In this document: positions 10,901-31,900 of the stretch, one piece after another
Position numbering within the stretch: position 1 is the stretch's first letter
How the letters are laid out: every line of letters begins with the position of its first letter
Assembly: GCF_003918875.1 (NCBI RefSeq)
Contig: NW_025765359.1
Location: forward strand, 620,001-684,000
DNA from: Haliotis rubra
Taxonomy: Eukaryota
DNA: 64,000 nt
Direction of reading: 5' to 3'
Notes under the pieces: generated by a model
The model's input: the letters and a program-made list of their open reading frames with translations, nothing else
Databases searched by the model: none
What the model was told of the DNA's origin: nothing
Translations under genes and position numbers: made by a program

Positions 10901-13900
10901 AGAGGAAGGTATTTATATGTCTGTCTGTCTGTATGTTTGTAGCTTATATGTCTGTTGATGTATTCAGTTAGCTGCGACATTAGCCAATATTTCTTTTCTA
11001 AACATGATAACACCTCTTGATAGCCCTATCTCTAACCATCTAAACCTCGACATTTCTGTGCACTATCTGGAATCTCATCTTGTTCTCAAATCTTTTTAAT
11101 CTGCTAAATATTCTTGACATCTCTCCTTAACAATGTTTACTAATGAATCTGATATTATGAATCTCATTTTCTCTTTACAAAAATATACAAATAATATTCT
11201 TGATTAGGAAAAACTGAATGCAATATCTTTCTTATATTTGAATAATTCATAAATTATACATCAATTTTTCAAAATCTATAATCATGAAGTTACAAGAAGT
11301 TGTAATTACACATTAATCACATTTACAAAATGTCACTCTAGTTCTAATTCTAACAGTGTTTTAATTAAAAATAATATTTCTCATCTTTTGAAAATAATAT
11401 TGAATGACTCTGTTATATACCTCCAATAAAACCTCCCTTCCAGCTATGATAAGCTTATTATGTATATGTACTGCAGCTGACCAGTTCTGTATATAATACA
11501 TGTCGTATATGTTGTTGTCTGTGTTGGTGGTGCTAATGGCAATATGCACTATACTGACTATTGTCACTTTGTGTCCATGTAACATACCAGTAACGGTTAC
11601 AATACCATGTTGCCAACGTTGATAGTAATTGTCAACAATTTTAATGTTACATTGTTACAATGTTGCCAACACTGATGATGGTGGATGGTCATGTTGCCAA
11701 CATTGATTTTAATAGTAATGGTTAATCTTTCTAACAAGATTGCCATATTGCCAAGATCGATTGCATTTTTTAAAGCCATAAACCTTCTTGAGTTTAAGTA
11801 GAAAGTTTAGAAAGACATAAAGTTGGCTTCATTTAGACTAGCTAATTTCAAAATCCTTGTCAGTATTCTCTACAATATTTTAATTCTAGTAACAACAGGG
11901 GCGGTGGGGTAGCCTAGTGGTTAAAGCGTTGGCTCGTCACACCGAAGACCCGGGTTCGAATCCCCACATGGATACAATGTGTGAAGCCCATTTCTGGTGT
12001 TCCCCCGCTGTGATGTTGCTGGAATATTGCTAAAAGCGGTGTAAAACTAACATCAGTCAGTCAGTCTAGTAACAACATTATAACAAATGGTACCATTAGA
12101 TCAGAGTGTGCCACTTCTTCATCAACACTCGATGTCACCACAATTTGATAATGATTCATAAATATATGACAACATTGGAATTGTTGGAATTTCTTTTGAT
12201 CATTAAAATGGTGACATGAAGTTATTTAAATCTCATAGTAACAGTCAGTGTCATACTGGCAATGATGTTGGCAACATCGGGTGGTAACCATATTTCATAT
12301 ATTTTTGTTTTGTTTTGTAATCTCATCATATCATTGTTGCGTTGTCCTTCTGTTCGCCATCTTAAAGTGTTTTCTGTTGGCCATCTTCATCCTTGTAGTA
12401 CTTACATTGAACAACAACATAGAACACTGACTGGGCCAGCCCTGTTATTTGTGATGATCCTTACTAAATCCTTGCATATGAAAAGGAACAGATGATGTCT
12501 GATAGTTATTTCAACTTCCTCAGTCTGTGACTACAATTATCTTCTCATTCACTTATGATTGAGAAAGGAAGATGGGCTCGACTAAAACTAGCTTTAGAAA
12601 ACCGATTATGTCCTTTTTGGAAAAATGACATAGAGGATTAATATCATGTTATCATAGTTTGTCCTAACTATTTGACATTTAGACGTTGCTACATACCTCT
12701 GGACGTATACAAGTCTCCAAACATGATGAAGTTTATAAATCTTTTACAAACCAAAGTTGAAGTATTAACCTTCAACCTAACCAAATTTGTTTATCACATA
12801 TTTCAGGTTATGCAAAACTATAATTTGAATTATCCATGAGTGTTATCTTCTTTCTAGTGCTGCCTTTTGTCACGAAAGGTCTTTGTAAATGTTGGCAATG
12901 CGCTTTTGAAACTATGTAAAAATGTATTTTGTCATATTGGCTGTTGGCCTATTAAAGAAATAAACGTATTGATTCTGTGACCTTAGCTTCTGGTCTGAAG
13001 CCCAAGTGTAGCAGAATTCTATTGATTCTTGTGAACTCGGAAAACCATAAACTTTAAGGAAAAGGATGCTTAGAAGTATAAGGTCACAGGTTTAGGGCAC
13101 AGACTGTTTCAATATTATTCAAGGTCAACCAGAAAAATGTAAGTTTGCTATTGACACAGCATTGAAAACAAAATTTACTATAGTCTTCTTACTTCATATC
13201 CTGATCAAACATCAGACATTCTTCTATTTTGAATAAAGCTTCTTAAAAAATCAATTATTTCTGCATCTGGTCTCCATCAAAAAAATTTTACCTGAATTTT
13301 GGGAAATATGATAGTAAAGATAATGGTTAAAAAACTAAAAGCTGCTGTTCAAAAAAGATTTACCAAAATATGTTCAACACTGATTTTTGCATTATCTGAT
13401 CTTATCGTTACACAACTGTTTTGTCCTTTACTCCAAATTGATCTATTTCGGCAGACAATCAAGACATATTGTGGTTATATTCAATTTGATATTTAAGAAT
13501 AACAATGCTGTTGTATTAAATATTTCACCTAAGACACATTTTGGAAAGAATTAGACAATACTTCCCTGTGCTCGCCAAAAAGTACTTTTTCTGATGACAG
13601 GACACATAAAAGACCTTGACCCCTTGACCACAGTGACCTTGACATATAGAAACATTTTTCGTCCTGCTATCATCCATCAATTAAACTAAACACTCATTCC
13701 TCCCATGACTTATTTATCAAATCAATTTGCATAATTCTTTTATCGTACCATCAGTCTAGATCTTCACATTCCATCCCATACCACTGTACATTCATTTAGA
13801 CTAGTATTAATAATTTTTATCCCATTTCAGTGATTTATTTATGCTGGTTCATTTGCAACAAAGTGCTTGACCATTTTGCTTTCATGACCTGAAAATATTG

Positions 13901-16900
13901 ACCAGTTATTGAACATATTATGTCACATATTGATGAAAAGTAAGAACTGAAATGTTTACATTTCACCGTTTCTCCATTAATTATGTCACTAAGCAGACTT
14001 GCACAATTGTAGCTCATTACAGAATTAGACTTGTAAGAAAGTCACTAGTTAATCTAGTACCCCATTAAACCAAGTATTTGAATTAGTACAATATCATTAT
14101 TTTCCCATTGAATCCATATCATTTTAGACAACAACCTCTTATAACATTGATACAGAGTTATACAGACAATAGTAAAGACAATAGTAAAGTATGTTTTATA
14201 TTTGGATATGTTTGAAACTTTACAAAGGTATATAGTCAGTTCTCAGGAAAACCTTTTTAGTCCTTTCTATATCAAATAGCAGTTGTACCTTTAATTATAA
14301 TTTGGATCGTCACTAACTGATGTAATTGTTCTCGGCTAGTGGACAAGAAGGGCCGGCGCTTGTCTCAGATCGAGATGATGAGGAAGGGGCTGAAGAAGGT
14401 GGAGAAGGCAGAAGGAAGTGACAGTGAGGAGGAGAAGGCAAGTAGTCAGATTGTTTGCAGTTTGGGATTCAGATTTGCTGTGGATCCAGACTTGTCATCC
14501 AAGCACAGATGCTTACAATTGGACCCTTAACATTCTTGCGGTATTTGTTGCCCTCCTCAAATAAACACAGCCATGTTTCATATGGTGTTGAATGAAGATA
14601 ACTGGTTAATTACATATCAATATGTGAAATTATTATTCAAATTGCTGAATACTAGTACATAAAATAGAATTTAGAATTGTACAGCATATCTGTTGGTCTT
14701 ATAGTAAGTTTTTTGGTTGTTCACAATTTTTTGCTTAAGTACAATTTGGAAAAAATAGTATGTTATTATAGATTTGTATTATATATTAATTAAAGAGTTG
14801 TCTATATCATGTTTATATTTTATTCAAACTGTATCAACCTCATGGATGTGACTTTCAGATGTTGAAGAAGGTGATAATGGTATAATAACTCCTGACAAAT
14901 TTAGCTCACCTGGTAAATATATTTTGCCATTAGCCATCATTTTGGTGAAATGCAATATTTGAGCCCCTTTTCTGTCTATATTTTGAAAGTTTGACAAGAT
15001 TGAACCCTCACACTTTAAAATATCCTAATTTGTCCCTGATAAAATTTATATTTAATATTGATTCCAATCTTGCTGTTTTAAGAAGATGACTCTGAAAAGT
15101 TTGAATTAATTGTAATATTGTTTAACCAGGAGAGCTACAGCTTTATATCAGTGACTACAATATTAAAAATGATAGATGAATTCACAAGTTGAGCAGTAAG
15201 GGCGGCATGCAAACTGTTCAACAAACTGGTTCCAGCTGAATCAATGATGGGAGCTTTGCCTTCATCTAATAATATATATCTCTCATACTAAGCAGATGTT
15301 GTAATGTTGCAAAGACCAGTATGTGCAATGGAATCATACTTGTCTAAAACTAATGATAACTTGAAAATAACGGTAATCATATTTTATGGCTCTTTTGTTT
15401 TCAAATGAGAAATACAAACTCATGCTAAATTATTTTTGTCCTATTCCCATTCTGCAAAGCAATCTTAGCAGTACAGTGATTGTAAGCCAATGTTAAAATA
15501 TAAAGTTACAATCGCCTTATTGCTGAGATGGTTCTGTGGAATGGGGCATTAGAAGACAGAAGCATTATTTAGCTGATGAAACTGTAAATTTTAGAATAGT
15601 TTTCTTCAAATTGATTAAATACCACAAGGTTAATTTAGCTTGTGATTTCCATCACTTGTCAGTGATAAAGCTTTTTCAGATTTGGTCTGAATAACATTCA
15701 AGGTTGATATATGACATAAAAGTTTGATTCCATTCCACAGAATTAACATGCTATATCACATTCCGTTTCTCTCTATGCAGTGCCATTAACATGTCTTATT
15801 TCTCAATATCCGTCATATTCCATTACTATTTCAGATTTTGGTTTATAATATTCATACTTGTGTCGTATATCTTCCCCTCACATTCCAGTTATGTGCCCAA
15901 TCCAAACTCCCATTTGTGGTACCATAACATATGCCTTTTTTAACCTTTCAATATTTTTCAGTTTTCAGTTGTACAATTTTACAATTTTAATTTTTCACTT
16001 GGTTTTCATGTGGTTTAATCACTGTGTTTTCATGTGCACATCACCCTTTATTTCAGTAAGAACTCACACTTTAGCAATGCTTTCACCTTTATTAAAAATC
16101 AGAATTCTTTTTTTGTTTTCTTCTACCGCTTTATTGTAAGAAACTATTATTTATCAAACAACATACCTACAACATATCCATGTTTATATATAATATTTTA
16201 ATACTCTTGTGCAACTTAATTCACTGATTTCTTTGTCAAAGAGATTATTAATATTCTATATTGCCCTTGCAAGCTGCATCAAAAGGGGAAAAGATTGAAA
16301 AAAATCATTTTGGAAAATTTGCATGGGTTTCAACTAGGCTGCCATGTTAGTGCGTACCCATCACCCATATGCTTCTGTGATTCTCGGCATCCTCAGGGGC
16401 GGTGGGGTATCCTAGTGGTTTAGCATTCGCTTGTCATCCTGAAGACCCGGGTTCAATTCCCCACATGGGTACAATGTGTGAGGCCCATTTCTGGTGTCCC
16501 CCGCAGTGACATTGCTGGACCACATGGGTACAATAAGTGAAGCCCATTTCTGGTGTCCCCCGCCGTGATATTGCTGGAATATTGCTAAAAGCGGCGTAAA
16601 ACCAAACTCAGGCAGTCAGACATTGCTGGAATATTGCTAAAAGCGGCATAAAACTAAACTCACTCACTCACTCACTCGGCATCCTCAGTTTTGATGCAGC
16701 TTGCCAATGATATCACTTCCCACACCAATAACACAAAGCTCCCAACATATTTTTGTTTTCTTTCAACTCTGAAAGGAGCGCTATGAAAGAGAAAGGTTCT
16801 CATACACTCGACGTGAAAAAGTGGAGCGGATAGAAGTATCAACTGAATATGCTGATCTAGACAAGGTTAAATCTAGACTAGGGCTACATGTTACATAGGC

Positions 16901-19900
16901 ATTTAGAAATGTTGGCTTTTCATGTTTTTAGCCCAATTTTGGTGTGTGATCATATGATACGTGTGTTAGTGTTCTCTTTTCCTAGAGTGCTTGGCCTAGT
17001 TGAAGGGCATACCTCTCTTTGGTGTGTGGCCTTGTTACAATATGTGCACTATCGTTTTGGCCCAAACATTTTTTCTTTCAGGAAGCCCTCATTTATGAGG
17101 GTTTCAGGAAACCTTCATTTATGAGGGTATACAAGATTCTTGAGCTCATGCTTTGAAGGATGTGTTGTTATTCAGTTCTAAGATGTAAAAGATGATCTTT
17201 GTTCTATGTGATCAAAAGATCAACACTGGGTATAGCGATCAAAATTCCTTTCATGAGAATCATTTGTTTCTTCAACTTTCTGTGTGTGAGCGAAAGAATC
17301 TTTGTATCGCCATCCTTAGGATTTAATGATGCTGATGTCTAAAAGGATGTCCCCAACCCTCAATTTTGAGGATGCAGCAATAGCTTTTCCCTCATCACTG
17401 ATGATCGTGACATTTTGAGGGATAATAGGGATGTAGTGTAGTAGATGCATTAGAACAGAAATATTTGTCATTTAGATCGTTTGTCTGTTTGTCTAAAATG
17501 TAAGCTTTTAGAAACAGCTAGAATCATCCTGTAGAGATTTTATAATTGATTCTTTTTCAGGATTTTGAAAAAAGTATTTGAAAACTATTTTTAAAAAGTA
17601 TTGAAATAACATTTTTTGTGATATAATGTAAGTAATTGTGCTGTTCATCATTCTGAATTTATGTAATTTCATTTGAATAATTTGAAAATATTCCTATAAT
17701 TTTAAAACAAACATTGCTGCCGCTGCTAAAAGATGCCCCTGCGCTTCTTGCATTTCAGGATAACTAGCTGAAGATCAGTCAAAATGAAATTTACTAACCC
17801 AGCTCGGAAGAGCACAAATATGCGTGATAATGAAGCGTAACCAGATTGTCTTGTTAATGTCAATAGCAGAAGGAATCGGCTCGCAGACAGTCAGTTGAGC
17901 TGGAGGCGCCCGTAAAGAAAGTTTCTGCTGAAAAGCTGGAAGCCCTCGAACAGCAGACGCGTAGGGCATCAATGCAAATGCGTAGGGCATCGTTAGCAGA
18001 ATGTATTCCTGATTGGCCTACGCTGTCAAAGCGACACGTCATTAAAGAGGTATAAACATATCGACAAAATAATTAACATATTTAGATACTCAAAAACTAA
18101 CAGTGTATTCATTTGGAGAAATTTCTACGATATATATATATATGTCAAGAAAGCTAACCTAACAACCCCTTTGCACCTATACACAAATTCACAGTCAAAG
18201 ACTAACTGAAGTTGATGTTGTCGGCTGTATTTATTTCATACTATGCTGTCGATGTCACCAGCTTATTCCACTCTGCACATATAGACCCTACTAACATATC
18301 TGTACACTTACTCCTTCATCAGGCCATCAGCTTCATCACCAAGATGCAGCAAGAGATGAAGAGATGCTTGTATAATAATGAGTCTCCATTGCTTTTGTAT
18401 GCTGGACATCGCACTCAAAGCATACAGAGTAAAGCAAAGTTCAGTCGAAGGCTTTGAGGATGAGATGGGTCAAGGGAAGTTCTCACAAGGTTGCAGAGTC
18501 GCGAAGTTCAAGGGGGAAGATTATATTAATGATAATGATAATAAGTATCCATTACTTTCATATGCTGGACTTCATGCTTAATGTATACTATGAAAAGGTA
18601 AATTTCAGTCAAAGGCTTTGAGGATGAGATGGTTCAAGGGAAATTCTCACAAGGTTCAAAATTGAAGGTCAAGGGGAAGATTGTTCAATTTATAGGCTGC
18701 AGTATAAGAGAAGGCTTCTTAACTTAAGGGTCAAGTTTAAATTTAGGCTCAAGAAATAGATTCTGAATGGGAAGATGGAGTTTAGGGTTGAAGAAGGTCA
18801 CAAAAATATAATGGAGCTGTTTGAAAGTTGCACCGATTGACAAAACAGACATGGGTTGATGCACTGATGTACTGGAAACCAATGAAGTTTTTTTAAAATC
18901 AGAGAGCTTGATGAAAGCTGACCACTTGCCACTCTGCTTACTGTGCTCATACTTCTTCTGACAAAGTCTCATATATTCTGCAATTGTTTCTTTACCAAAG
19001 GACGACTAATTTTGTCTGTTTCTTTGGATCAGTAAGTATCGGAAACAGCATGCAATGATAACCATTCATAATTATCTGAATGAAGCTGCCAAGGTTTATG
19101 AAGTGCGTAAAGGTTGTTGCATGAACAGATTGAACTGTGCATGGATGAATATGTTTTTATGATATATATTGTGAAAAAATATGTGCACGAAGAGTTATTT
19201 CCCTTGAAGGAACAGGAAGTTGTTTTGTGTACAAGGTAAGCAGGATCAGAGATACCAACCTTGCTGAGTACACTGTACTTGTAATACTCCATGACATCAA
19301 TAGTCTAAATACTCAAGGTACAGCAGCTCACCTTACTGAGTGGTTTAAAATTTTCACAATGTGCTAAGCCATCTAATTCATCTTGGAAATATAACTTCCG
19401 TATGATAAAAGTAGTTTTCAATGATATCATTTGATACTTTGAAAATTTTGATTGGAGAGGATATGAATCTGGAACAAGTTAATAATTTTTTAATTTAATG
19501 TTAAAACATGACTGCAAGTGTTTTGGACACTTGCTCACTTAATACCTTTAAAATATTGTATTCAACTTCTAATTGCCGTAGTTTGTGGTGTGTCCTTGGT
19601 GCAGGGTTGGTAACTCTGTGTCGCTCATGTTTGTATATGGAATATTTTACACGATTGAAATACTTTAGGAAAATGATTTTCAGTTTTAGAATGCATGTTG
19701 GTATATAGTTAGCTAGAACAAAGCTTTTTTATTGTAAACAATTACTTTCAGCTTCTATACCTTCTGGTTGTAGAAAGTATCGAATTCCTGATGCACAGAA
19801 TGTTGTCCTCAAGCACATGATAAATGAAATATTGCAAAATCTAAAACAGTCGAATCTCATTAAGTAGAAACCATGTAATTAGAAAAAATGAAAAGGGAGA

Positions 19901-22900
19901 TAAGATATGATGTTCATTGTTAATTGCATTGTATCATGGAAATTGATAAATATTTTATTGGTCCTTTGAGTCATTAATAATGGCAAGTTGATCACCAAAC
20001 CAGATGCAGTTATTTTATGCAAATGCTGACTGTGGTTAATGTGAGTACCTAGCATCTCATCTCTTATACAAACAAACACAAAGACATGTCCCTTATGTAA
20101 ATCATGATGATGATGATGAAGATGGTGATGATTTGGAGATTTGATATGGACTTTCCAACATAATGCGTATTTTTGTCATAAAGCGCACGTTAAATCTCCA
20201 AATCATCATCATCATCATATACATAAGGGACATGCCATGAGTTTGTGCATTATGTACATGAAAGACATCAGGGGTGGAAATAACTTTAAAATTGCTAGTG
20301 TACTCCGGAACAGTGGCACATGTAAAATCACTTGCCCTGATAATTATTCCACTATACCAGCCGTTTTCTCGTTGATTTAAACAACATAATTAACATTGGA
20401 AAGTCAACTGGACACCGGTACAGTGTGATATACAAATTTGCTTGCCCTACAGAAAAAAACACTTGACTCGGACGTCGGGCAATGGGTTATTTCCACCCCT
20501 GGACATGTCCCTCATGTACATGAATGACATGTCCCTTATGTACAATCTGATTTGTATCAGCTGCCTTTGGTGATAATCACTATCAGTGTGAGTCTCTTTG
20601 TAAATTGCTATTTCAAAAAGTTGTACACCCTTGTTTTAGATTACCCTTGGCTTGCAACTTATTGAGAGTCGACTGTCTCTTGTTTTTGTCATATCTAAAG
20701 AACCATAGCACAATCACAGTGATACCTTATTGGAGATTTCAGATATCAGTTTTAAATTAATTACATGTATTATTTTGAAATCACACTGATTAAATTAAAC
20801 ATCTTTTTTTCCCAAGATACAATGATATATATAGTGCTGAATTGTTAGGAATATCATGAATTAAATTCATCTGCTGTAATTTATATTCATAGTTTCTTAA
20901 ATCTTAAATGTTAAATATTTGGCATCACCAGAACACCGTAAGACATGTTATGATTTAGAAAACAGCATTCATGTTAAATACCTCCTCAATATTATTAGTT
21001 GAATTCAATTTTAACACAATAAACAGTAAAAACCTATTTCCCTGACAACAGGAGCCAGACAAGTTCTTAAAGGAGCTGGATGATGTCAAGTGTATTGAAG
21101 GAAAGGACCGCATTACCTTTTCGTGCGAGTTCTGCAAACCAAATGCCCAGGTGCGATGGTTCAAGAACAAGATGGATATTTTCCATGGCCACAAATACCA
21201 TTTGACAAATGACGATCATGAGTACAAGCTGGAGCTGTACAACGTGAAGCCAGAAGATGGTGGCAAGTACACATGTCAGTGTAACGACGTCACCACCTCA
21301 GGCTGGTTGTATGTGGAAGGTGAGAACTCTTACAAATATTTGTTGGTACTTCAAAGAACTAGTTGGAACAGTATTTCTCTAGTCATCAGCATTTGCAGCT
21401 AGTCCTGCCTAAATGAAGTAAAAATATTTTTAATTGTCAGTTTTATTCAGTTCAAATTTGTATTGAACTTGATGCATTGAGGTCTGAGTCGGAACCATAG
21501 CCCTTAGGAGCTAATTGTCGCCTAATTGAGGACTCACCACAGTTTAGTGGTCTTGGGCTAGCAGCCCAGAGTAAATTTTGAAAGTTGGTGAGGCTTTAAC
21601 TATTGACAGGCAGCACATTTGTATTTGTCTTATTAAAATTGTCATTGATTTTGAGTGAAAATTGTTAGATTAAAATCACACAAAAATCCTTAAACTACAA
21701 AAGCAACACAGCAGAGTTTGGCACTATAATCCAGAAAAAAAATAGCGAAAAGAATTGGGTTGGATGTTTTTCATATTTTTCACCTTTGAATTTATCCCAT
21801 CAGACACAAAAGACATTCATTACAGATTATGCTACACAAACTAACTCCAGAGGTACCGTCTGATCCTAGAATTTACACATTGCATGAGACTAAAATGTAC
21901 CGGTACACAGTTTATGCCCAGTGGAATCTGTTTCAACAGACATGAAGACAAGTCTTCCTCTGGCATTAATGTTTTATATTTGCCTAAGTAAACACCCAAT
22001 TAAACAAAGTGCAAAATGGTGATCAGAATATTAATGCTTTCTCTAAATCCAAGCATGTTACTAACAAAGGGAAATCAGTGTTCAGAGAGCTGCTTTCTGA
22101 TTGGCTAATTGTGATGTGACCTTGACCTTGCAGCCAAGGAGCCTGAGTACTACTTCACTCAGAAGCTGCCACAGCACCATGAGATCACCAGGAAGAAGGC
22201 TGGCATGTTGGGAGTGCTTCATCTCTGACCCCAGGGCCAGGGTCAAGTGGTACAAGGGAGATGAAGCACTGGAGGTAACATTCTTGAATACCACTAAAAA
22301 ATTTATGATGATAGTTTTGGTTGAAAAGGAATAATTCATTCAGATCACTTTCATAGTTTCAGTTTTATTGAAATATTTCTAAGTGCAGCATTAAACAGGA
22401 CTGACTGACTGCCTGAGTTTGGTTTTACGCCACTTTTAGCAGTATTCCAGCAACATCACGGCGGGGGACACCAGAAATGGGCTTCACACATTGTGCCCAT
22501 GTGGGGATTCGAACCCGGGTCTTCGGCGTGACGAGCCAACGCTTTAACCATTAGGCTACCCCACCGCCCCCATTAAACAGGAAACCATCAATATTTAAGA
22601 TAGTGCAATATGTCCAATGAATGATGAAAACGATCACTATTATTGACATTTAAGGGCATTCAAAACCATTATTGTGAGTGCAGTTTCGCTGATTTTTTTG
22701 ATTTGACAAAACTCTGATTTCATACCGATGAAATATTTGTAGCAAATTATGGCAACATCATAGTGGATATCTTTAAGCAATAATGATGAGAATGTGGTTC
22801 TCTTGTCCTGGTGATTTTCTGAAATAATGTCCAAATATGCAGGTAGCATCTCATCTACACAACAACACTTAAAGTTTGGTATGGCTGATTGGCATAAAAT

Positions 22901-25900
22901 GTATTTTCATATGGAGTGGATCCCATGGAGCTGGGGCAATGTGTTAACAACAGAATATGAAAAGACAACAAAAAAAGTGTTGACAACAGAACACTTGACT
23001 TGAAGCATTTTCGTCTGTTGCCATGATCAATAGTGAATAGAATTTTTTTTCACTAAATTGGGATAAATGTAAAATTATACTATCCATTGAGTAAGGAGTT
23101 TTATGCCCTAAGTGCAATCTTGGCTGAGAATGCCATGTTTTTGTTTTGTTTGTTGTGTAATGCTGCACTCAGCAATATTCCAGCTATTTTACAGAGGTTT
23201 GAACCTGGACTAGACAATTCAGTGATAAGGTGAGGTGAAATTGGGTTCAACGTCGTACTTGAGAATATTTCGCTCATATGACGACGTGCATGCGCGTGTA
23301 TGTGTATGTGCGGCTGTTTGTACTAGCGCAGACTGAAGCTGGTTTTATAGTGCCAGCCCACTGAGATACCATGCCGCAGTGAAGCATGAATACCCCACTC
23401 AGACACATTATACTGACTCCGAGCCGACCAGTCCTTGTTGTACCCATTAATGCCGAGCGCCAGGCAGGGACCAACAAGTACCATATTTTAACGTCTTTTG
23501 GTATGACGTGGTCGAGGATCGAACCCGCGACCTTCCACTCTCTGGGCGGACGCTCTAACCACTACACCAAGGAAGCAGTCTCTGAATTCATATTAGTGAG
23601 TGAGTCTAGTTTTACGCCACACTCAGCAATATTCCAGCTATTTTACAGAGGTTTGAACCTGGACTAGACAATTCAGTGATAAACATCATGAGCAATATCT
23701 ACACAGTTGGGATACCAAGAATGGGCTTCACACATAACATCCATTTTGGAATTAAACCTGTGTCTTTGTCATGACAGGCTAACACTTTAACCGCTACACC
23801 TCCCCTGAAATTTCAAAACAGTTAAAGACGATGAACTTACAAATATGTTTAATAATGAATTGTATACATAATATATCCTCTTTGATTTACACCTGATCAT
23901 GTCATAGTTTTAATACATTAATCATTTTATTATGTACATATACAACCATGACTAATTTGCCTATTTATTTACATTTATTAACATGATATTTACATATTTA
24001 CTATTCAGATAAAGGTAAGTACAATGTGAATATCTAGATGTCTAACCTCACACTGTTCACAATTTTATACACATGAACATGTTTTTCATTCACGTTTCTT
24101 ACTCATTTTTCTGTTCACCATCAAAGACTTGCAGTTGTTTCAACACAACACAGAATCTGTCACTGGTCATCTGTTTGGAAAGGTTATTGGAATCAAGCAT
24201 TCAATAATATTTTATCTTTTATATTTCTTGAAATACAGCAATTAAAGGATTTGACACAAAATTCAAATTCAAAATGCTTTTATCGTTTTATCAATTCTGA
24301 ACTCAGTGTTAAAAAAACGGATATTGGTTTCGTCAAGTACTACAACATTTTTGTCTTATATATTTGTTGTGGAATTTGGATGGTTCATTAAGATTGTTTT
24401 CATTCTAGTAGTATATTTTGACTGACAATAGCCTTTCCATTGAAGACCTCAACAATATGTTGTTTGTAATCCAGAACACTTCCTTGGGCAAGTAGGATTC
24501 ATTCACATATTAACCCAGTTCACATCTTGCACATGTCACAAAGATGTGTTGTTCCATCATTTCTGCAAACCTTGCACAATTTGATATTCCCAGATTAACT
24601 ATTGGGTGAATGAGTGAGAGAAACAAGCTGTTTTCTGCACCACTGTTTGCAATATCCCAGTGATATCCTACAGGATTATACAATGGTGTTAATGCATTGT
24701 AGCCATCACACAAGAGTCATTTTGTGAATGGTGAATGTTTTAACTTAATTATGCCAACTGAATTAGGAAAGGAGGTAAGATCAAGATCCACTGCCTGTTC
24801 CCCACATGCACAAATACAGATACAGTCACTTTAGTTTTTCTTCATGGCTTGACTTGGATGTTGTGAAATGATTCCTGGCAGTGCACAGTTTATGGACAAT
24901 GTTTTCCACACATCTGATATTGTCATTACCTCTTTAGGATCAATAGTTGACGTTTATGATCCTTCAATTTGTCTGATTATGTTTCCATCTGATTTTGATT
25001 CCATCCCTGATTTTGATTCAAACAGAATCAAGGCACAATGTTTCAGGAGACTCTTCAAGATTATGTGAGAGATGTGATGGTGTTTTTCTCCAAGATTGGT
25101 TCAAGCATTGACCATTAGTTTCCTTAAGTGGTAGATTTCTTCCTGACTGCGAGGAGCCATCAACTTTTTGTTTCTCCTCTTGTCAAAGCTGTTGAACCAT
25201 CTTGGCTGCCCATGAGCTCTTCTCTTCAACCTCTTCCTCTCATAGTCATCTGCTGACCCATGACCTTTATGCTTCCTGGCATGTTTATTCTTCTGTTTGA
25301 CTGATTCATAAGATGGAAAGAGCTTGGCAGGATAGGAGAAAGATCTTCCCTTAAGTCTGTCAAATAACCTTTCCTTCTCATTGAACATCTTCATGACAGG
25401 ATCCGACTCTGCTTTCTCTGGCTTGTATGGATAAGTCTGTTCAAAATCTTCCTTCCTCCTGTGCATCTGTCTTATGTCATCCTGCAGATCTTCATAATCC
25501 TCAACCTGTCGCGGTTGCAAGGCTGCAGAAGGATCAACAAAATGGTACCCTCTAGGAGCTCCAGCTCTTCTTCCTCCATGAGCAAATGTGGGACTGCTTC
25601 GACCAGTGTAGTACCATTGGAGGAATGTACCCACAGAAGCTAGGGCTCCTGAAGGAAGAGCCATCTCTTTCCACAGAAGCTGCTTAATGTCTCTAGCTTT
25701 CGGCTTGGGAGGTACCTTTACCTTAAGAAGGTAGTTGTCGTACAGGATGAAGAAGACATCACAGTACAGCCTCGGCCTGAGGAACAGAGAGGATTTGATT
25801 CCTATCCTGGTATCGAACACAGCCAGCTCATCTCCCTCATCAAACTCCTCACCAGCTAATGTTAGTTTGTAGTTTGAGAGAGACAGCCCTGACTTCATCT

Positions 25901-28900
25901 CTACTCGTTTCTTAAAGGCTGCCACTGTTTCCTGAGCATACGCATGCATCTTGTAGATGACATTCTGGGTTGTATGGATGAACACTGGATACTGAGTCAG
26001 TTTGAGGTTGACGTGAGTCCTGAGATCCTCCACAGCTGTGACTATTCTTTCTCTGTTTGAAAGTTTATAGTCACCCAAGTACATATCATACACAGAAGCA
26101 TTCGGGACACCGAGTTGTTCCAAGATGGCTTTCACTGATCGTACAGATCTCTTGGATGAAACTTTTAGGATCTCGGTCACATCATCACCCAGTTTGAATT
26201 TCAATGAGACTCCATACAAAACGTCCGGGTCAGCATTTGACAGACTTAAATCCATAGTGATAGCAGGTGTCCTGTATGTTTGTTTCTTAAGTGTTTCAGA
26301 AAAGTCCACCTCTTTGCCGCCTCTGAAGATGCGGATCAGATTCACGGATACTCCAATGATTCCATGCAGTTTTAGAGCAACTGTAGACCATCGGTCAAAC
26401 TGGGACACTTTGACTGTGTGAACTTTGCCTGCATCATCAGTAATTGGCATTTTCTGAACACTCAGTTTGTGGTACAGGCCAATGGTTGATAGTTTCAGCG
26501 TATCATTGTCATCTACTCGGTAGTATCCGAGGCAAGTGCTCCAGTTGACTACCTTCCGCTTGTGGTATAATACTAGAGTGTGTTTGGGTAGATACAGGTC
26601 AAATAGGGCCATGATGTCCGGTGTGTTCTTGGTCACTGTTCGTCGTAACACTGTCCAAATAACATTCATTCCAGTCATACACGGGTCCAGATACAAATGG
26701 TATGTGCTGCCCCAGAAAGTCTCAACATGGACTAACATATCATACAGTATATGCACCATGACAAAGATAGTTGAACTCTTTCCTATCCTATAGTTGAAAA
26801 GGTATTGCCTGTTTTCTAATGGCTGATCCTTGAACAATAAATCAAGTCTCTCCATGGCTAAGCCCCTTTCCTGTTGGAGTCGAAACTTCAACTGAAGAAC
26901 TGTCATAAATAATTCGACCTCCATCTCAAATTTCATGTTCAGCTGTTTGATTTCAATATTGACCTTCACCAACTCTTTTGGCATAATCAAGATGGCTGCC
27001 CCAGATTCCACCTTGTAGAACTGGGAGATGTCCATGGGATGGTTGGTTCCGGGTTTCAGCATCATCAACTTATGGATCCTTTGGTCGTACTGAAGAGTCT
27101 CCTTGGTCAGTCGTAGAATTGTTGACAGGTCATCACTGATGACCGGTGTGTACAGGTTGAGGGTATCTGGGTCTTTGTATGACCACATGACCAACTGCTG
27201 ACCCAGTACACCATCAAGGTCAAGGCCGTCCAACAATGAACTGTGGTACAGCCCGTCATCACTGTCATCATCTCTTTGTATTGCTTCCAGTTTCCTTTGT
27301 CTCTCTCTCCTCTTCTGTAACAAGTAGATTCATTGTTAACACAAGATGTCTAAATAATTGACTAATTGAAGAAACAGAAAATGAGAAGGGTTTCTTTGCA
27401 ATACAATTAACTCAGTTTCACTTTTTAATTTTTAAGCATTTTTTACCTGTCAGTTATTCTTTTGTTGGAAATTAAACAAAGATTGAAACACTTGATATGG
27501 TCTACAGATTAAAGTGTAAATAAAAAAAAATCACTGATATGCAGTTTCGTATAGGACCCAAGTGTTAACAATTTATCTTATACATTACAAAGTATGAGTA
27601 ATTTTGTATGCAGACCACAGAATATTATTGTACACAACCCAGTACAGAATTAAATACAACCCAAATAATGAGTCTTAACTTTCTGAGAAAAATATGAATT
27701 TTGTTTTAAACCAAATCAAACTTTCAAAGTGACTTACCCTCTCTTTCACCCTCCTTCCCCGTGGGTCTCGGAGCTCCAGTGGATTGTCATGATATATTCC
27801 GTACATTCTTGTTCAATCACAGCTGATTTCAGCTCAATGTCTTTCTTTCTAAATCCATAAAATGAAATCTTTTGAGATTATTCCATATCCTCACAACTGA
27901 CACTCACTTTCTCAATGAAATGATTTGAGAAATTGTCGTATGACAAGAAAGTGACTAGCTGTCGGCCATGTTTGCCTGTGTTGCTAATACAAACAGTGAG
28001 GTAGGGCCTGGCCGCACTTAAACTGGGTAGACACAAACATATACCAGCTCCTCACAGTCACCTAGCTGTCATTTCACCAGTGTGACGCTTCACTGCACCG
28101 ATCACTTTATCTTGATTTCAATACCAATAACGGAAAGCAAGCACACGTTTCAATGGCCTATTGACTTGGGGAGAATTGACACTGACGTAGGCTCACAAGT
28201 ATTTGCTTTGTTGGCGTTGCAATGAAAAGGTCATATGATCTTGTATATTAATGTACAAGCATTACTGCAACACAACGTGAATATATCTCCATTGGCTCGT
28301 CAGTGTGAGAGAAATATAGCTATTATCTTGTATAAGCCTATAGTGTGTAGTATGTTTAAGCTGTAAGATACACTGATCATTCATAGAGAAAGTCACATTA
28401 AAAATATAGGCAGCCATCGATAAAGGTTGCAATACTAACTATTTATATCAAATATTGCATTTATATCAATAATAAATTATTTATTATTCATATTTGTTAA
28501 AATAATATTGATGATTCATTTTCAAATTTTGACGATATATGTTACATGTTGATTATTATTAGTGTTTTTTAAATGAAAGTTTATGAAACTATTCATTGTA
28601 CTGATTTTCTGAGTCAGTCATTCAGTCAATGATTATTATTGATTATTTTTGATCCACTGATAAATATATCTTTGCTAATAAATATGATTGAAAATGGCCT
28701 GATGTAGCTATACAGGTAGAAAATGGTGAGATTATTGCACTTATGATCCTTTATCAATCTGAAGTTTTAACTGAAAATGTTCTGAAATTATATTTAAAAA
28801 TTCAATTATTTAACTAGAAAAACAAAGAATCAAAGAAATTGCTAAAAAAATATTTTACAAAATTAGGAATACATTTGAATACATTATGAAAATTACTGTG

Positions 28901-31900
28901 TATATGTTGAAACCAAGTTTATGTTCTATCTATAAGTTAATCTTCATAATTCACAAAAAATCAACATCAAAACCCATAATCATTGTCTTTCATATGTTGT
29001 GTTTAAGTAATTCATCTCAAGTAAAACTACAAGTTCCCACAACCATATGTCATCCTGTATTTAATATGTAACATGTTTGTTTTTCAGTACACCCCTGGTA
29101 TCTACGAGATCCAGAGGCGAGAAAACAGATGTATTCTCAAGTTCCCAGATGCTCAGTCCGACTTGGAGGGAGAGTACACTTGCCGTTGTGGAGACGCTAT
29201 CACTAGCTGCGATCTCTATGTGGAAGGTAAACTCTCATTGAGAAAGGCATCCTCAATTGTTTCCACTCTCTTAAAAAAACATCCATTTTTTTATTATGGG
29301 GCCAAGACTCAGGAACACATGAATTGACTTAGACCAGATCAGACTAAAAGACAATTATGATTTTGCTTTTGGATAGACTTATTTGATTTTTGTATTTACT
29401 AATTTTTGACGCATAATTCAGGTTAGTGATTCAAAGTAAATAAAATTATAATTTGAAAAGTGACTGAAAGTCAATAATGAAATGTCTTTCCGATAGACTT
29501 ATTTGTATTTTGATTTACCAATTTTTGTCCCAAACTTCAGGTAGTGGTTCAAAACAAATAAAATTACAATTTAAAATATGAAATATTGTCCTCTTAATTA
29601 GAAATAGGTAGAAGAAATTTCTGTTTTAAAGTTTTAAAGAAAAGTTTTGATATTTAGTTTTTATTGATAGTAAGAGTGAATGAGTTCTAATATTTGACAT
29701 TTTTCTGATAGGAATAAAACCCCAATATTTTGTATTAATGTTTTTCATTCCAATTTGTATTTTTGGAGTCAGTAGATTAGGAATGTATGTTCAATATGTA
29801 AATATCTGAAATATGTAAATATTAATATGATCATCGTATCAGAACCTGAGTGGGAGTTCATGAAGAAGCTGGAGGATGTAGAGGCTGTTGAACGTGAAAA
29901 GGCCATCTTCACATGCGATGTCAGCGACCCAGAGGCTGAAGTCAGCTGGTTCAAGGATGAGAAGGTAAGAGTTATCCCCCTTTCTCGCAAGGACATCTTT
30001 AATTACTTCAATAGGTTTCTTTGAGGTGCAAGGTCAGTTTTATTGTTTTCGTAAGATCTTTTCTGAGCCCATGGACCCTAACTCCCTCATGTGCTCCAGT
30101 GTAAATGCTAAACCTCAACACAGCAATATTTCATTCACTTCACAAATGAATATGCTCCATGTTTTAACAGCAATATAGCCATTGTCAACAGGTTGGTTAC
30201 TGGAGGTCCAACTCTATCCTGCTCTGAATTGTAAATGGGATTTTAAATATTTTAAAATAATACGGAAATTTAAATCTCACCTTGCACCTTTAATAATTTT
30301 CTACATGCAATTATAACCTGTCATCGATATTATTGAAACCTATCTGTGATATTTCATGATTATTTAATGTCACATCCTGCTGACATACACCAGACTCCTG
30401 GGCCTAGATTTTCGAAGCTTTCTTAGCGCTAAGATAGTCGTAAGTGCCATACATTAACATTAACTTATGACTATCTTAGCGCTAAGAGAGCTTTGAAAAT
30501 CTAGGCCCTGGTACTGAACCCTGAAGTAATATCTAACAAATAACACACCATGTAAAATTCAAAGTACTAAATCCTGTTCACTTGTATTAAAATATTAACA
30601 CATATTGTAACGTAACACATAATTGTCTGCATTATTTATGTTAAATTTGGATTTTTCATTTGAACTGAGTTATAATGTAGTGATTGTTGTACTTATTGTT
30701 TTATATTGTTGTGTTTGTTGTTGTACTAATTTTGTATTGTTGACTTAACGCCTAACAGACAGAGACTGGTGAAATTGTTACCATCAAGCTTAACACCGAG
30801 GAGGTATACCTGTAGTAACTTAGCTAAATTGTTTCAACTGAATAGTATAGTCTTTCCCACCTACTAGCACCCCATAACATTATCTCATACTCCCTATATC
30901 ATACATTGTTACATTTTGTACATAGCACCCTGTAGCACCCCATAATATCATCTCATAATATCTATACAATACTTTGTTACATCTTGTATATAGCACCCTA
31001 TACCACATACTAGGGCTGGCTATCTGAGGTGAGGTGAGGTGAAATTGGGTTTTACGTCGTGCTTGAGAATATTTCGCTCATATGACGACATGCATGCGTG
31101 TGTATGTGTATGTGCGGCTGCTTGTACTAGCCCAGACTTAAGCTGGTTTTATAGTGCTAGCCCACTGAGATACCATGCCGCTGTGAAGCATGAATACCCC
31201 CTTAGACACATTATACTGACTCCGAGCCAACCAGTCCTTGTTGTACCCATTAATGCCAAGCGCCAGGCAAGGACCAACAAGTACCATATTTTAACGTCTT
31301 TTGGTATGACGCAGTCGGGGATCGAACCCGCGACCTTCCGCTCTCCGGGCTGGCTATCTGAAGCTCACAGAGATCGAAAAGTATTATCTAAGTATCTATC
31401 GATTATTCTAAAGTGCCAGAGAAGTAAATTTGATAAAAACAGGAAAATATTCCCAAAGAAATCAAGATATTTTACACCATGGGTTAGTGATATGTTTATA
31501 TATATTCATGAGTTACCGATACCAACGAGCACAAGCATCCTGAACACACCGCAGAAGCAGCCTTTGAATAATATAAGATATAATGTGTGCACATTAAATC
31601 TTTATTTCATCTCAACAGTTTAAGTATGATATTATCATTGAAACAATTTCATGTTGATAATTGTTGCTAATTCTTTTCCATGGACCATATTTCTGATTAT
31701 CAAACCCTTTAGCCAGCCATGTCATATTCTCATCTCCATTATTACAACTTGTACCCTTTTTTTATTATACAGTAATGTTGATGTCATAGTCATGGTGAAA
31801 TCTCAGATACTATACCCAGAGACCATATAATACCCAAGAAAACTAAATCGTCTTGGGTAACCATGACATTATTTGTTTTAGATATGTCAATTTTTTTCTG

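What the first reader, a model, noticed from the sequence alone, without database searches (positions are those of the whole stretch)
25101..27806. Nested antisense gene encoding a tandem ubiquitin-like-domain protein inside the intron that splits twitchin Ig9
Seen: an intact two-exon ORF (23 + 737 codons, canonical phase-0 GT-AG intron) on the minus strand of the 6.8-kb intron. By motif it has at least 5 head-to-tail beta-grasp/UBL units (starting VKVNIEIKQLN, MLVHVETFWG, QKMPITDDAG, VSLKFKLGDD, YPVFIHTTQN), probably a sixth at the N-terminus and a partial seventh, followed by a Lys/Arg-rich tail. No unit ends in Gly-Gly. Known: polyubiquitin has near-identical units, and ISG15/FAT10 are two-unit proteins with a terminal di-Gly. 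Inference: this is a non-cleavable, non-conjugatable multi-UBL scaffold that I do not recognise as a named family. Its function, and any link to sarcomere protein turnover, is unknown.
Basis: partly seen in the sequence, partly recalled or inferred. Interest (0 to 1): 0.85.

Follow-up and report, generated by a model that had tools for sequence, protein, structure and literature searches.

The report
Fossil polyubiquitin gene inside twitchin intron
A real, strongly conserved abalone gene lying backwards inside an intron of the giant muscle gene twitchin encodes seven ubiquitin-like units fused into one uncuttable chain; it belongs to an unstudied protein family that occupies this same intron in snails, bivalves and a group of unidentified animals.

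Summary
A 23 + 737 codon, two-exon minus-strand gene (CDS 27806..25101, GT-AG phase-0 intron) lies inside a 6,813-nt phase-0 intron (22275-29087) that splits an Ig domain of a giant Ig/fn3 (twitchin-like) gene. It equals RefSeq 'uncharacterized protein LOC124269082' of Haliotis rubra.

With a 41-species alignment, AlphaFold2 folds the 545-aa core confidently (pLDDT 90, pTM 0.86) into six complete beta-grasp units plus a truncated seventh. The core profile aligns serially, in register, with polyubiquitin over 494 columns (E 1.5e-30; shuffled controls score nothing). No unit junction carries Gly-Gly. Each unit is conserved in its own right; core dN/dS is 0.05-0.07.

New here: the family includes gastropods, bivalves and a divergent clade of unidentified animals. 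In all nine loci with enough flanking DNA the gene sits antisense in the same twitchin intron. Spliced mRNAs exist in a sacoglossan.

Best reading: an ancient polyubiquitin-type gene that lost its processing sites and became a rigid, non-conjugatable multi-UBL protein with a basic disordered tail. Its function and any link to muscle are untested.

The parts
27738..27806 (-). Coding exon 1 (Met1-Arg23) of the nested gene
   Evidence: ATG at 27806 with A at -3, 23 codons, then GTAAGT. tblastn of P0001 residues 1-23 is 100% identical. The N-terminus is conserved in Gigantopelta P0177.
27315..27737 (-). Intron 1 of the nested gene (423 nt, GT..AG, phase 0)
   Evidence: Sequence read. Lymnaea and Plakobranchus also have their first intron after codon 28 and 27 respectively.
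25101..27314 (-). Coding exon 2 (Lys24-Ala760 plus the stop codon at 25101-25103)
   Evidence: ORF listing; tblastn at 99.9% identity; identical to RefSeq-derived P0001.
26979..27194 (-). U0, N-terminal beta-grasp unit (residues 64-135)
   Evidence: AF2 topology b-b-a-b-b at pLDDT 85-94. In-register alignment with ubiquitin unit 1 in the serial polyUb alignment. Weak on its own: 27.9% probability against a single Ub, and PDB profile E 0.011.
26754..26969 (-). U1, canonical ubiquitin-like unit (residues 139-210)
   Evidence: Pfam PF00240 at 64.5 bits against a 25.4 cut-off. VIA Z 15, rmsd 1.0-1.1 A over 74 residues to ubiquitin. hhalign 98.7%. Translation checked.
26484..26738 (-). U2, UBL unit with a 14-residue extra helix and the near-invariant TFWG motif (residues 216-300)
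   Evidence: hhalign 90.7% to Ub and 95.5% to U1. AF2 strands and helices, with the extra helix at model 202-209. W224 is invariant in 41 sequences.
26250..26459 (-). U3, UBL unit (residues 309-378) with invariant D330 and near-invariant W332 and H340
   Evidence: hhalign 86.0% to Ub. The unit profile hits ubiquitin chains in register (profile 8-70 to Ub 3-66; di-Ub E about 1e-3). AF2 topology.
26001..26213 (-). U4, UBL unit (residues 391-461)
   Evidence: hhalign 95.2% to Ub and 96.6% to U1; AF2 topology.
25773..25994 (-). U5, UBL/UBX-like unit (residues 464-537)
   Evidence: hhalign 97.1% to Ub. VIA Z 12 to FAF1 UBX and Z 11 to TBK1 ULD over model 406-484. Pfam Ubiquitin_2 partial hit.
25605..25760 (-). 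U6, truncated seventh unit: beta-hairpin and helix, then a long C-terminal helix carrying invariant W590 (residues 542-593)
   Evidence: AF2: strands 487-493 and 496-502, helices 508-517 and 523-538, at pLDDT about 90. It aligns in register with Ub residues 1-48 only within the serial alignment. No stand-alone sequence support (0.6%; PDB hits are noise). Translation checked.
25104..25583 (-). Lys/Arg-rich disordered tail (residues 601-760; 38 K+R against 23 D+E; pI 10.05)
   Evidence: pLDDT below 50 in the first AF2 model; composition. Poorly alignable across the family except for short motifs.
22275..29087 (+). Host intron (6,813 nt, phase 0) of the twitchin-like gene; it contains the whole nested CDS
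   Evidence: Donor CTGGAG|GTAACA at 22274/22275 and acceptor TTTTTCAG|TAC at 29087/29088.
22212..22274 (+). Conserved end of the host exon that encodes the first half of the split Ig domain
   Evidence: ORF; 80-83% identical over 23-25 residues to Lymnaea and Plakobranchus exons at the equivalent position. No Pfam hit on its own.
29088..29226 (+). Host exon that encodes the second half of the split Ig domain
   Evidence: ORF; weak I-set match to profile positions 47-75; 41-62% identical to exons at the equivalent position in seven other loci.

Best explanation
This is a genuine, functional protein-coding gene (Haliotis rubra LOC124269082, 760 aa). It is not a chance ORF, a pseudogene or a transposon.

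The protein has three parts: a short N-terminal stretch containing an acidic cluster; a 545-residue core; and a 160-residue basic, disordered tail. The core is made of six complete ubiquitin-fold units and a seventh cut off after about 48 residues. The units are joined head to tail with the same spacing as in a polyubiquitin precursor.

Shown: the units have diverged from one another, each is conserved across species in its own right, and none ends in Gly-Gly. Structure prediction places them in one defined rigid assembly.

Inferred origin: an ancient polyubiquitin-type gene with at least seven repeats lost its processing sites and was fixed as a single-chain protein.

Inferred mechanism: deubiquitinases cannot cut it into monomers and it cannot be conjugated, so it acts as a whole. 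It would be a rigid multi-UBL platform whose individually constrained unit surfaces bind partners, with U1 (the most ubiquitin-like unit) the likeliest to engage ubiquitin/UBL receptors, and whose basic tail tethers it to an anionic partner or compartment.

The gene has sat antisense in the same phase-0, Ig-splitting intron of the twitchin-like gene since before gastropods and bivalves diverged. The default explanation for that permanence is entrapment inside an essential host gene, not a demonstrated functional link.
For: Reality and constraint:
- The ORF is 3.5 times longer than any other in the window; chance expectation is about 4e-16.
- It is identical to a RefSeq model.
- 41 full-length homologues have a core length fixed at 534-556 aa despite identities of only 17-59%.
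- dN/dS is 0.047 and 0.072 over 88 and 221 core codons between two sacoglossans.
- Uninterrupted ORFs on roughly 3-kb contigs from three SRA runs map as six exons onto the Plakobranchus genome, so they are spliced mRNAs.

Fold:
- Pfam ubiquitin in 41 of 41 members, with no other recurrent domain.
- AF2 mean pLDDT 90.2 and pTM 0.86, with six b-b-a-b-b units and a partial seventh.
- U1 matches ubiquitin at Z 15, rmsd about 1 A; U5 matches UBX at Z 12.
- Best Foldseek hits are linear tetra-ubiquitin (E 2.9e-22) and the USP7 five-UBL array.

Polyubiquitin register:
- Core profile against 8xUb: 99.85%, E 1.5e-30, 494 serial columns, with Ub-Met1 equivalents at the AF2 unit starts. The largest gaps are 14 and 7 residues.
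- Shuffled and reversed controls score 11-14 against 230.
- The original phmmer alignment runs straight across a Ub-Ub junction.

Not cleavable or conjugatable by sequence: no GG at junctions, and the protein ends in a basic tail.

Unit individuality: all units are equally conserved across species (majority fraction 0.43-0.50) but only 17-39% alike within one protein.

Nesting: the same host-exon order surrounds the gene in L001, L003-L008 and L012 as in the window.
Against: - Nothing here tests function. There is no expression data for Haliotis itself, no tissue information and no known partner.
- The rigid assembly rests on one AF2 model (pTM 0.86) whose coordinates I could not inspect, and no solved structure shares the arrangement (TM 0.12-0.20).
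- U0 and U6 have little stand-alone sequence support.
- A polyubiquitin origin is inferred from spacing and register. Serial duplication of some other UBL could give a similar pattern.
- Resistance to proteases is inferred only from the absence of Gly-Gly.
Confidence: 0.8

Rival explanations
1. The nesting is functional. The multi-UBL protein works with twitchin or the thick filament (for example in sarcomere protein turnover or catch regulation), and the shared locus gives co-regulation or antisense transcriptional coupling. That would be why the arrangement has been kept for so long.
For: The same intron, same orientation and same flanking exons are found in all nine loci with enough flank, spanning gastropods, bivalves and a clade only about 20% identical in protein sequence. 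The intron lies two Ig domains downstream of a D1-like linker exon with RRNS/RRMS motifs in L001.
Against: The gene is wholly intronic, so the mature mRNAs share no sequence. A gene inside an intron of an essential gene is hard to move, whatever its function. There is no tissue expression data, and nothing in the protein (only UBL units and a basic tail) points to muscle.
Confidence: 0.15
2. It is a mechanical or structural element rather than a binding platform: a chain of mechanically stable beta-grasp domains used as a rod or spring, anchored by the basic tail to the cytoskeleton or a filament.
For: Tandem compact domains with almost no linkers, and a core length fixed within 534-556 aa across the family. 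High pTM suggests a rigid body. The host gene is itself a tandem-domain filament protein.
Against: Each unit is individually conserved, including surface-type positions, which fits specific binding better than generic mechanics. There is no coiled coil, transmembrane segment or known filament-binding domain. This idea rests on analogy only.
Confidence: 0.07
3. It is still a precursor. It would be processed at non-Gly-Gly sites into free UBL modifiers or peptides.
For: The spacing is polyubiquitin-like, and a Met is kept at the first position of U2 in Haliotis.
Against: There is no GG at any junction in 41 species. Units differ from one another and the last one is truncated. The predicted inter-unit packing (pTM 0.86) argues for a single folded body. 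The junction residues vary between species.
Confidence: 0.03
4. It is a decaying polyubiquitin retrocopy or a transposon ORF that happens to remain open.
For: Single-exon ORFs in bivalve and clade-B loci look retrogene-like. Some databases label orthologues 'polyubiquitin'.
Against: dN/dS is 0.05-0.07. Orthologues sit at one fixed position in every species examined. Introns have been gained or kept in gastropods. There is no RT, transposase or integrase domain. The window holds one copy only.
Confidence: 0.01

Closest known systems
Polyubiquitin precursors (UBB/UBC type)
   Same: Ubiquitin-fold units joined head to tail with no spacer. The core profile aligns serially and in register with 6.6 ubiquitin repeats (E 1.5e-30). 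U1 keeps the equivalents of Ub Lys27 and Asp52 (K166 and N191, both invariant in the family) and hydrophobic residues at the Leu8/Ile44/Val70 positions (alignment).
   Different: The units are not near-identical (17-39% between units), and each is conserved individually. No Gly-Gly sits at the junctions, so there is no deubiquitinase processing site. U2 carries a 14-residue insert and the seventh unit is truncated. A 160-aa basic tail and a short N-terminal extension are added. The units are predicted to pack as one body.
ISG15 and FAT10 (two-UBL modifiers)
   Same: Tandem UBL domains in one uncleaved chain. ISG15 structures are among the Foldseek hits (E about 1e-9) and FAT10 domains appear in the VIA list (Z about 13).
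   Different: Those have two units and a free C-terminal Gly-Gly used for conjugation. This protein has about seven units, no terminal di-Gly and ends in a basic disordered tail.
USP7 C-terminal HUBL array (five UBLs)
   Same: A string of divergent, non-cleaved, non-conjugated UBL domains that act as a structural and binding module. Foldseek E 3e-16 over about 530 columns.
   Different: In USP7 the array is attached to a protease domain and a TRAF domain. Here the UBLs are the only folded domains. The global arrangement differs (TM 0.15, rmsd above 30 A). The spacing here is the polyubiquitin spacing.
Anciently conserved nested gene pairs (for example TIMP genes inside synapsin introns; from memory, not checked here)
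   Same: A small gene on the opposite strand, wholly inside an intron of a large host gene, kept there across very deep divergences.
   Different: The host and guest families are different. Here the guest family appears limited to molluscs plus unidentified taxa, and neither a regulatory nor a functional relation has been tested.

Membership tests
Ubiquitin family domain (Pfam PF00240, beta-grasp) | Sequence match above the curated Pfam threshold | tested here: met
   64.5 bits against a 25.4 cut-off for the window protein; 41 of 41 family members match.
Ubiquitin family domain (Pfam PF00240, beta-grasp) | Beta-grasp fold (b-b-a-b-b) that superposes on ubiquitin | tested here: met
   AF2 pLDDT 90 with six full units. 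U1 gives Z 15, rmsd 1.0-1.1 A over 74 residues; U5 gives Z 12 to UBX. U0, U2, U3 and U4 are judged from DSSP topology and profiles only.
Polyubiquitin precursor | Head-to-tail units without spacers, at the ubiquitin period | tested here: met
   Serial in-register alignment over 494 columns, with the largest gaps 14 and 7 residues; controls negative.
Polyubiquitin precursor | Near-identical repeat units | tested here: not met
   Units are 17-39% identical to one another within P0001.
Polyubiquitin precursor | Gly-Gly at the end of every unit for deubiquitinase processing | tested here: not met
   0 of 41 sequences at five junctions and 2 of 41 at U2/U3.
Conjugatable ubiquitin-like modifiers (ISG15, FAT10, NEDD8, SUMO type) | Exposed or exposable C-terminal di-Gly after the last UBL | tested here: not met
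   The last unit is truncated and followed by a helix and a 160-aa basic tail. The only GG dipeptides in P0001 are at residues 355 and 603, neither at a unit end.
USP7-type HUBL array | UBL array attached to a USP catalytic domain | tested here: not met
   No peptidase or other recurrent Pfam domain in 41 members.
Nested (intronic, antisense) gene | The whole CDS lies inside one intron of a host gene, on the opposite strand | tested here: met
   CDS 25101-27806 (-) lies inside host intron 22275-29087 (+). Annotated host genes span or flank the locus in Haliotis, Lymnaea and Pinctada.
Twitchin (host gene identity) | Giant Ig/FnIII protein of about 530 kDa with a C-terminal MLCK-like kinase and a phosphorylatable D1 linker | tested here: inconclusive
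   The host product is 4,994 aa in Haliotis. The Lymnaea and Pinctada hosts are rich in I-set and fn3. The flanking exons match I-set. An RRNS/RRMS linker-like exon lies upstream in L001. Size and architecture fit the description in PMC12040844. The kinase domain and a named homologue were not checked, and the 'Ig9' numbering is unverified.
Transposon or retroelement ORF | RT, integrase or transposase domain, or multiple dispersed copies | tested here: not met
   No such domain; a single locus in the window; one fixed orthologous position per species.

The most novel reading that the evidence does not exclude
A whole linear polyubiquitin chain was 'fossilised' in an ancestral lophotrochozoan into a single rigid seven-unit protein that deubiquitinases cannot dismantle. 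It would act as a permanent mimic or decoy of Met1-linked polyubiquitin, or as a dedicated adaptor, in muscle. In this reading its expression is mechanically tied to twitchin transcription because it has been kept inside twitchin's intron for functional reasons since before gastropods and bivalves split. That would add a previously unknown ubiquitin-like layer to thick-filament or catch-muscle biology.
Probability: 0.1. Interest if true: 0.85.

Novelty: new variant of a known kind. Interest (0 to 1): 0.6.

Why it matters
Tandem UBL proteins are known (polyubiquitin, ISG15, FAT10, the USP7 HUBL array). A free-standing, strongly constrained array of about seven UBL units is not among them: one that keeps the exact polyubiquitin spacing, has lost every processing site and is predicted to fold as one rigid body. 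No solved structure shares the arrangement.

It offers a natural example of how a modifier precursor can turn into a structural or binding protein. It may also be a natural deubiquitinase-proof analogue of linear polyubiquitin.

The nesting is an unusually clean case of deep microsynteny, with the same Ig-splitting intron used across gastropods, bivalves and a clade only about 20% identical. That makes it a useful marker for twitchin gene orthology, and a testable case of whether host and guest genes are co-regulated.

The practical caveat is that the gene model already exists in RefSeq as 'uncharacterized', and that its function is unknown.

Tried and rejected
- **First AF2 run.** With the 14-row gastropod alignment it gave an unusable model (pLDDT 45.6, pTM 0.25). 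It was replaced by the 41-row core alignment.
- **Literature.** Searches for six LOC identifiers, six protein or locus accessions, and assembly or run accessions found nothing relevant. A search on twitchin nested genes found nothing on this pair.
- **Identity of clade B.** The word-index search with the divergent subgroup returned only unnamed ENA and NCBI proteins. The source records (ERZ..., GCA_029979845.1, a 'CHAS20-1 ... The taxa remain unknown.
- **U6 profile against PDB.** It hit designed armadillo repeats (E 5e-5) with zero stretches passing on their own. I judge this to be repeat-inflated noise.
- **U0 and U6 against other units.** Profile-profile comparison gave no significant match, so they rest on the AF2 model and the serial register.
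- **Pfam on the first-half Ig exon alone.** No hit. Its identity rests on cross-species tblastn.
- **'Ig9' numbering.** The review read (PMC12040844) gives twitchin's overall architecture but not the position of D1.
- **Pseudogene, transposon and chance-ORF readings.** All rejected.
- **PP1-type RVxF reading of the clade-B 'VRFELP' motif, and a bipartite-NLS reading of the Haliotis tail.** I considered both from memory of the consensus patterns. Neither is conserved family-wide, so I do not rely on them.

Full report

Yes, in every detail.
- The minus strand carries a 740-codon open frame at 25101..27323. It is the longest open frame in the 64-kb window, at 742 sense codons against 213 for the runner-up. 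At the window's stop-codon frequency (0.058) about 4e-16 such frames are expected by chance.
- Upstream, an ATG at 27806 (A at -3) opens 23 codons that end at 27738 and are followed by GTAAGT. The acceptor TTGTTACAG|AAG puts the start of exon 2 at 27314, giving a 423-nt phase-0 GT-AG intron.
- The 23 + 737 = 760-aa product is identical to a database protein, 'uncharacterized protein LOC124269082 [Haliotis rubra]' (P0001). So the window is blacklip abalone (contig QXJH01000142.1 of GCA_003918875.1), and the gene model already exists in RefSeq.
- On the plus strand, a first-half Ig exon ends at 22274 (CTGGAG|GTAACA) and the second-half exon begins at 29088 (TTTTTCAG|TAC). The host intron is therefore 6,813 nt and phase 0, and it contains the whole nested CDS.
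- The neighbouring host exons match Pfam I-set.

**2. Is it a functional gene?**
- A word-index search found gastropod orthologues at 42-58% identity: Lymnaea, Bulinus, Biomphalaria, Candidula, Physella, Plakobranchus and Elysia.
- An exhaustive profile search added about 17 further full-length, single-stretch members.
- Named members now include Gigantopelta, Babylonia, Batillaria and Patella, and the bivalves Pinctada, Mercenaria and Mya.
- Across 41 members the core length varies only from 534 to 556 residues, while identity to the abalone protein falls to 17-20%.
- Between Plakobranchus genomic exons and an Elysia-like mRNA, Nei-Gojobori dN/dS is 0.047 (88 codons) and 0.072 (221 codons) at dS of about 1.1-1.2.
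- The Elysia-like protein P0011 is encoded without interruption on contigs of about 3 kb from three separate SRA runs, yet maps onto the Plakobranchus genome as six exon blocks. Those contigs are therefore spliced mRNAs. This is indirect evidence for transcription; I have no expression data for Haliotis itself.
- Gene structure varies: 2 coding exons in Haliotis, 4 in Lymnaea, 6 in Plakobranchus and essentially 1 in Pinctada and clade B. The first intron falls at an equivalent place in the three gastropods.

**3. What does it encode?**

Pfam finds the ubiquitin family above threshold (64.5 bits against a 25.4 cut-off). It does so in all 41 members, with no other recurrent domain.

A first AF2 run with 14 sequences failed (pLDDT 45.6). 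With the 41-row core alignment the model is confident: mean pLDDT 90.2 and pTM 0.86 over 545 residues.

DSSP on that model gives six complete b-b-a-b-(3-10)-b units and one partial unit. Model numbering is P0001 numbering minus 55.

| Unit | Model residues | Notes |
|---|---|---|
| U0 | 9-80 | |
| U1 | 84-155 | |
| U2 | 161-245 | extra helix at 202-209 |
| U3 | 254-323 | |
| U4 | 336-406 | |
| U5 | 409-482 | |
| U6 | 487-538 | beta-hairpin, helix, then a long helix |

Independent support, unit by unit:
- U1 superposes on ubiquitin at Z 15, rmsd 1.0-1.1 A over 74 residues. U5 superposes on FAF1-UBX at Z 12 and on TBK1-ULD at Z 11.
- Profile against a single ubiquitin gives U1 98.7%, U5 97.1%, U4 95.2%, U2 90.7% and U3 86.0%. 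U0 gives 27.9% but aligns in register. U6 gives 0.6%.
- The U3 profile hits ubiquitin chains in register in the PDB sequence search. U0 has one weak in-register hit. U6 returns only noise.

U0 and U6 therefore rest mainly on the confident AF2 topology and on the serial register described next.

**4. Polyubiquitin register**

The core profile aligns with an eight-repeat polyubiquitin as a single serial alignment of 494 columns (model 9-531 to Ub 1-504; probability 99.85%, E 1.5e-30).
- The ubiquitin Met1 equivalents fall at model positions 9, 84, 161, 252, 337 and 486. These are the AF2 unit starts.
- The only sizeable gaps are the 14-residue insert in U2 and a 7-residue insert between U3 and U4.
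- At default stringency the alignment still spans U0 to U6. Column-shuffled and reversed profiles score 11-14 against 230.
- The original phmmer alignment already ran straight across a Ub-Ub junction without a gap. From that alignment, the family-invariant K166 and N191 correspond to ubiquitin Lys27 and Asp52. From general knowledge these form a structural pair in ubiquitin.
- No junction carries Gly-Gly: 0 of 41 at five junctions and 2 of 41 at U2/U3. The only GG dipeptides in the abalone protein, at residues 355 and 603, are not at unit ends.
- Units are about equally conserved across species (majority fraction 0.43-0.50) but only 17-39% identical to each other within one protein.

My inference is that a polyubiquitin-type gene of at least seven repeats lost its processing sites, and that each repeat then specialised.

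**5. Overall shape**

Foldseek's best matches are linear tetra-ubiquitin (E 2.9e-22), the USP7 five-UBL HUBL array (3e-16) and ISG15. Query-normalised TM is only 0.12-0.20 and rmsd is large. The domains are UBLs, but no solved structure shares the arrangement. The high pTM implies fixed inter-unit packing rather than beads on a string. I could not inspect the coordinates, so I cannot describe the shape.

Flanking the core:
- a short N-terminal stretch containing an acidic cluster (DDDSDDG, residues 38-44);
- a 160-residue tail with 38 K+R against 23 D+E and pI 10.05.

**6. The nesting is ancient**

I took the four host exons around the abalone gene and ran tblastn against every fetched locus, each oriented with the UBL gene on the + strand. 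The host-strand order was always the same: previous-Ig second half, split-Ig first half, the UBL gene on the opposite strand, split-Ig second half, then next-Ig first half.

This holds in Lymnaea (L003), Plakobranchus (L004), Pinctada (L005) and the unnamed loci L001, L007 and L012. In L006 and L008 only the distal half-exon is missing, and it may lie beyond the 10-kb flank.

Annotated host genes agree:
- a 4,994-aa product spans the locus in Haliotis;
- a 3,958-aa I-set/fn3 protein spans it in Lymnaea;
- two Ig/fn3 models of 3,403 and 1,349 aa are broken exactly at the nested gene in Pinctada.

A maximum-likelihood tree recovers gastropods and bivalves as clades (100/99 each). It also shows a long-branched clade B of 16 unnamed sequences. 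Clade-B loci show the same nesting, and the window contains only one UBL gene, so the two clades are positional orthologues. I could not find out what animals clade B comes from.

From general knowledge, the gastropod-bivalve split is Cambrian, so the arrangement is of the order of half a billion years old.

**7. How it most likely works**

Shown: a constrained, single-chain array of six and a half UBL units with no processing or conjugation sites, plus a basic disordered tail.

Inferred: it acts as an intact, deubiquitinase-resistant platform. Its individually conserved unit surfaces bind partners, with U1 the most likely to engage ubiquitin/UBL receptors. Its tail tethers it to an anionic partner or compartment.

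I put about 0.9 on the identity and architecture and about 0.35 on this mechanism.

For the conserved position, the default explanation is entrapment, because a gene inside an intron of an essential host is hard to relocate. A functional link to twitchin or sarcomere turnover is possible (about 0.15) but has no direct support. A mechanical-rod role (about 0.07), a cryptic precursor role (about 0.03) and a pseudogene or transposon reading (about 0.01) are less likely.

**8. Comparison with what is known**

It works like, and probably descends from, polyubiquitin. It fails two defining features of a polyubiquitin precursor: identical units and Gly-Gly ends. It is not an ISG15/FAT10-type modifier because it has no terminal di-Gly. 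It is not a USP7-type array because it has no catalytic domain.

Databases call it 'uncharacterized', 'Ubiquitin-like domain-containing protein' or, wrongly, 'polyubiquitin'. No paper in the searchable library mentions any of the loci.

I class it as a new variant of a known kind, a free-standing fossilised poly-UBL family.

**9. Verdict**

The 'twitchin Ig9' label is only partly checked. The host's size and Ig/fn3 architecture fit twitchin as described in PMC12040844, and a D1-like RRNS/RRMS exon lies two Ig domains upstream in L001. I verified neither the domain numbering nor a named homologue.

Interest is 0.6. The architecture and the depth of the nesting are genuinely unusual and unpublished. 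Against that, the gene model is already in RefSeq, the UBL fold is commonplace, nested genes are expected to stay put, and the function is unknown.

Noticed in passing
window 23386-23667 (+) and 31039-31623 (+): Two ORFs in successive host introns share a long, nearly identical peptide (...PLRHIILTPS.PVLVVPINA.RQA.TNKYHILTSFGMT...). This looks like two copies of a repeat element (SINE or TE-like) in the same orientation. One copy lies in the same intron as the nested gene. It may be the element behind the scan's note on a SINE-mediated exon duplication at 41351-45934.
   Followed up: no
window 25233-25259 (-), P0001 residues 709-717: In an otherwise unalignable basic tail, a short motif is conserved among gastropods: GSADDYERK in Haliotis, RSADDYERH in Gigantopelta and R-H/Y-M-S-A-D/A in heterobranchs. 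It has the form of a basophilic-kinase site (R-x-x-S).
   Followed up: partly
L001 about 12600-12700 and other clade-B proteins (A3 columns about 1155-1170): Clade-B members share a C-terminal motif, K-K-(K/L)-x-V-R-F-E-x-P, which is absent from gastropod and bivalve members. From memory it loosely resembles a PP1-docking RVxF motif; this was not tested.
   Followed up: no
L003 (Lymnaea) 17552-17620 and 17133-17204, minus strand: The first-half exon of the split Ig domain gives two tblastn hits about 400 nt apart (83% and 71% identity to the abalone exon). This suggests a tandemly duplicated, possibly mutually exclusive, exon just upstream of the nested gene.
   Followed up: no
L005 (Pinctada imbricata GCA_033119305.1): The host Ig/fn3 gene is annotated as two separate models (3,403 aa and 1,349 aa) that break exactly at the nested UBL gene. 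This is probably an annotation artefact caused by the nested gene.
   Followed up: no
P0008 (Plakobranchus ocellatus), P0009 (Elysia marginata): Orthologues are named 'polyubiquitin-c' and 'polyubiquitin' in public records. That is a mis-annotation, because they lack identical units and Gly-Gly ends.
   Followed up: yes
L001 17341-17529 (minus strand): Upstream of the Ig exons, an ORF holds ...QRRNSMANRRMSL..., two basophilic-kinase (PKA-type) consensus sites. It resembles the D1 regulatory linker of molluscan twitchin and sits in the same relative position as the window's linker region noted by the scan at 8461-18049.
   Followed up: no
window 27878-27886 (-) and 27829-27858 (-): Two very short upstream ORFs (ATG-GAA-TAA, and a 9-codon ORF) lie within 80 nt upstream of the nested gene's start codon. 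They matter only if the 5' UTR extends that far.
   Followed up: no
L007 16977-18272 (+): A reverse-transcriptase ORF (RVT_1) lies in the same host intron as the UBL gene in this clade-B locus, between the UBL gene and the upstream Ig exon. It shows that the intron also accumulates retroelements.
   Followed up: no
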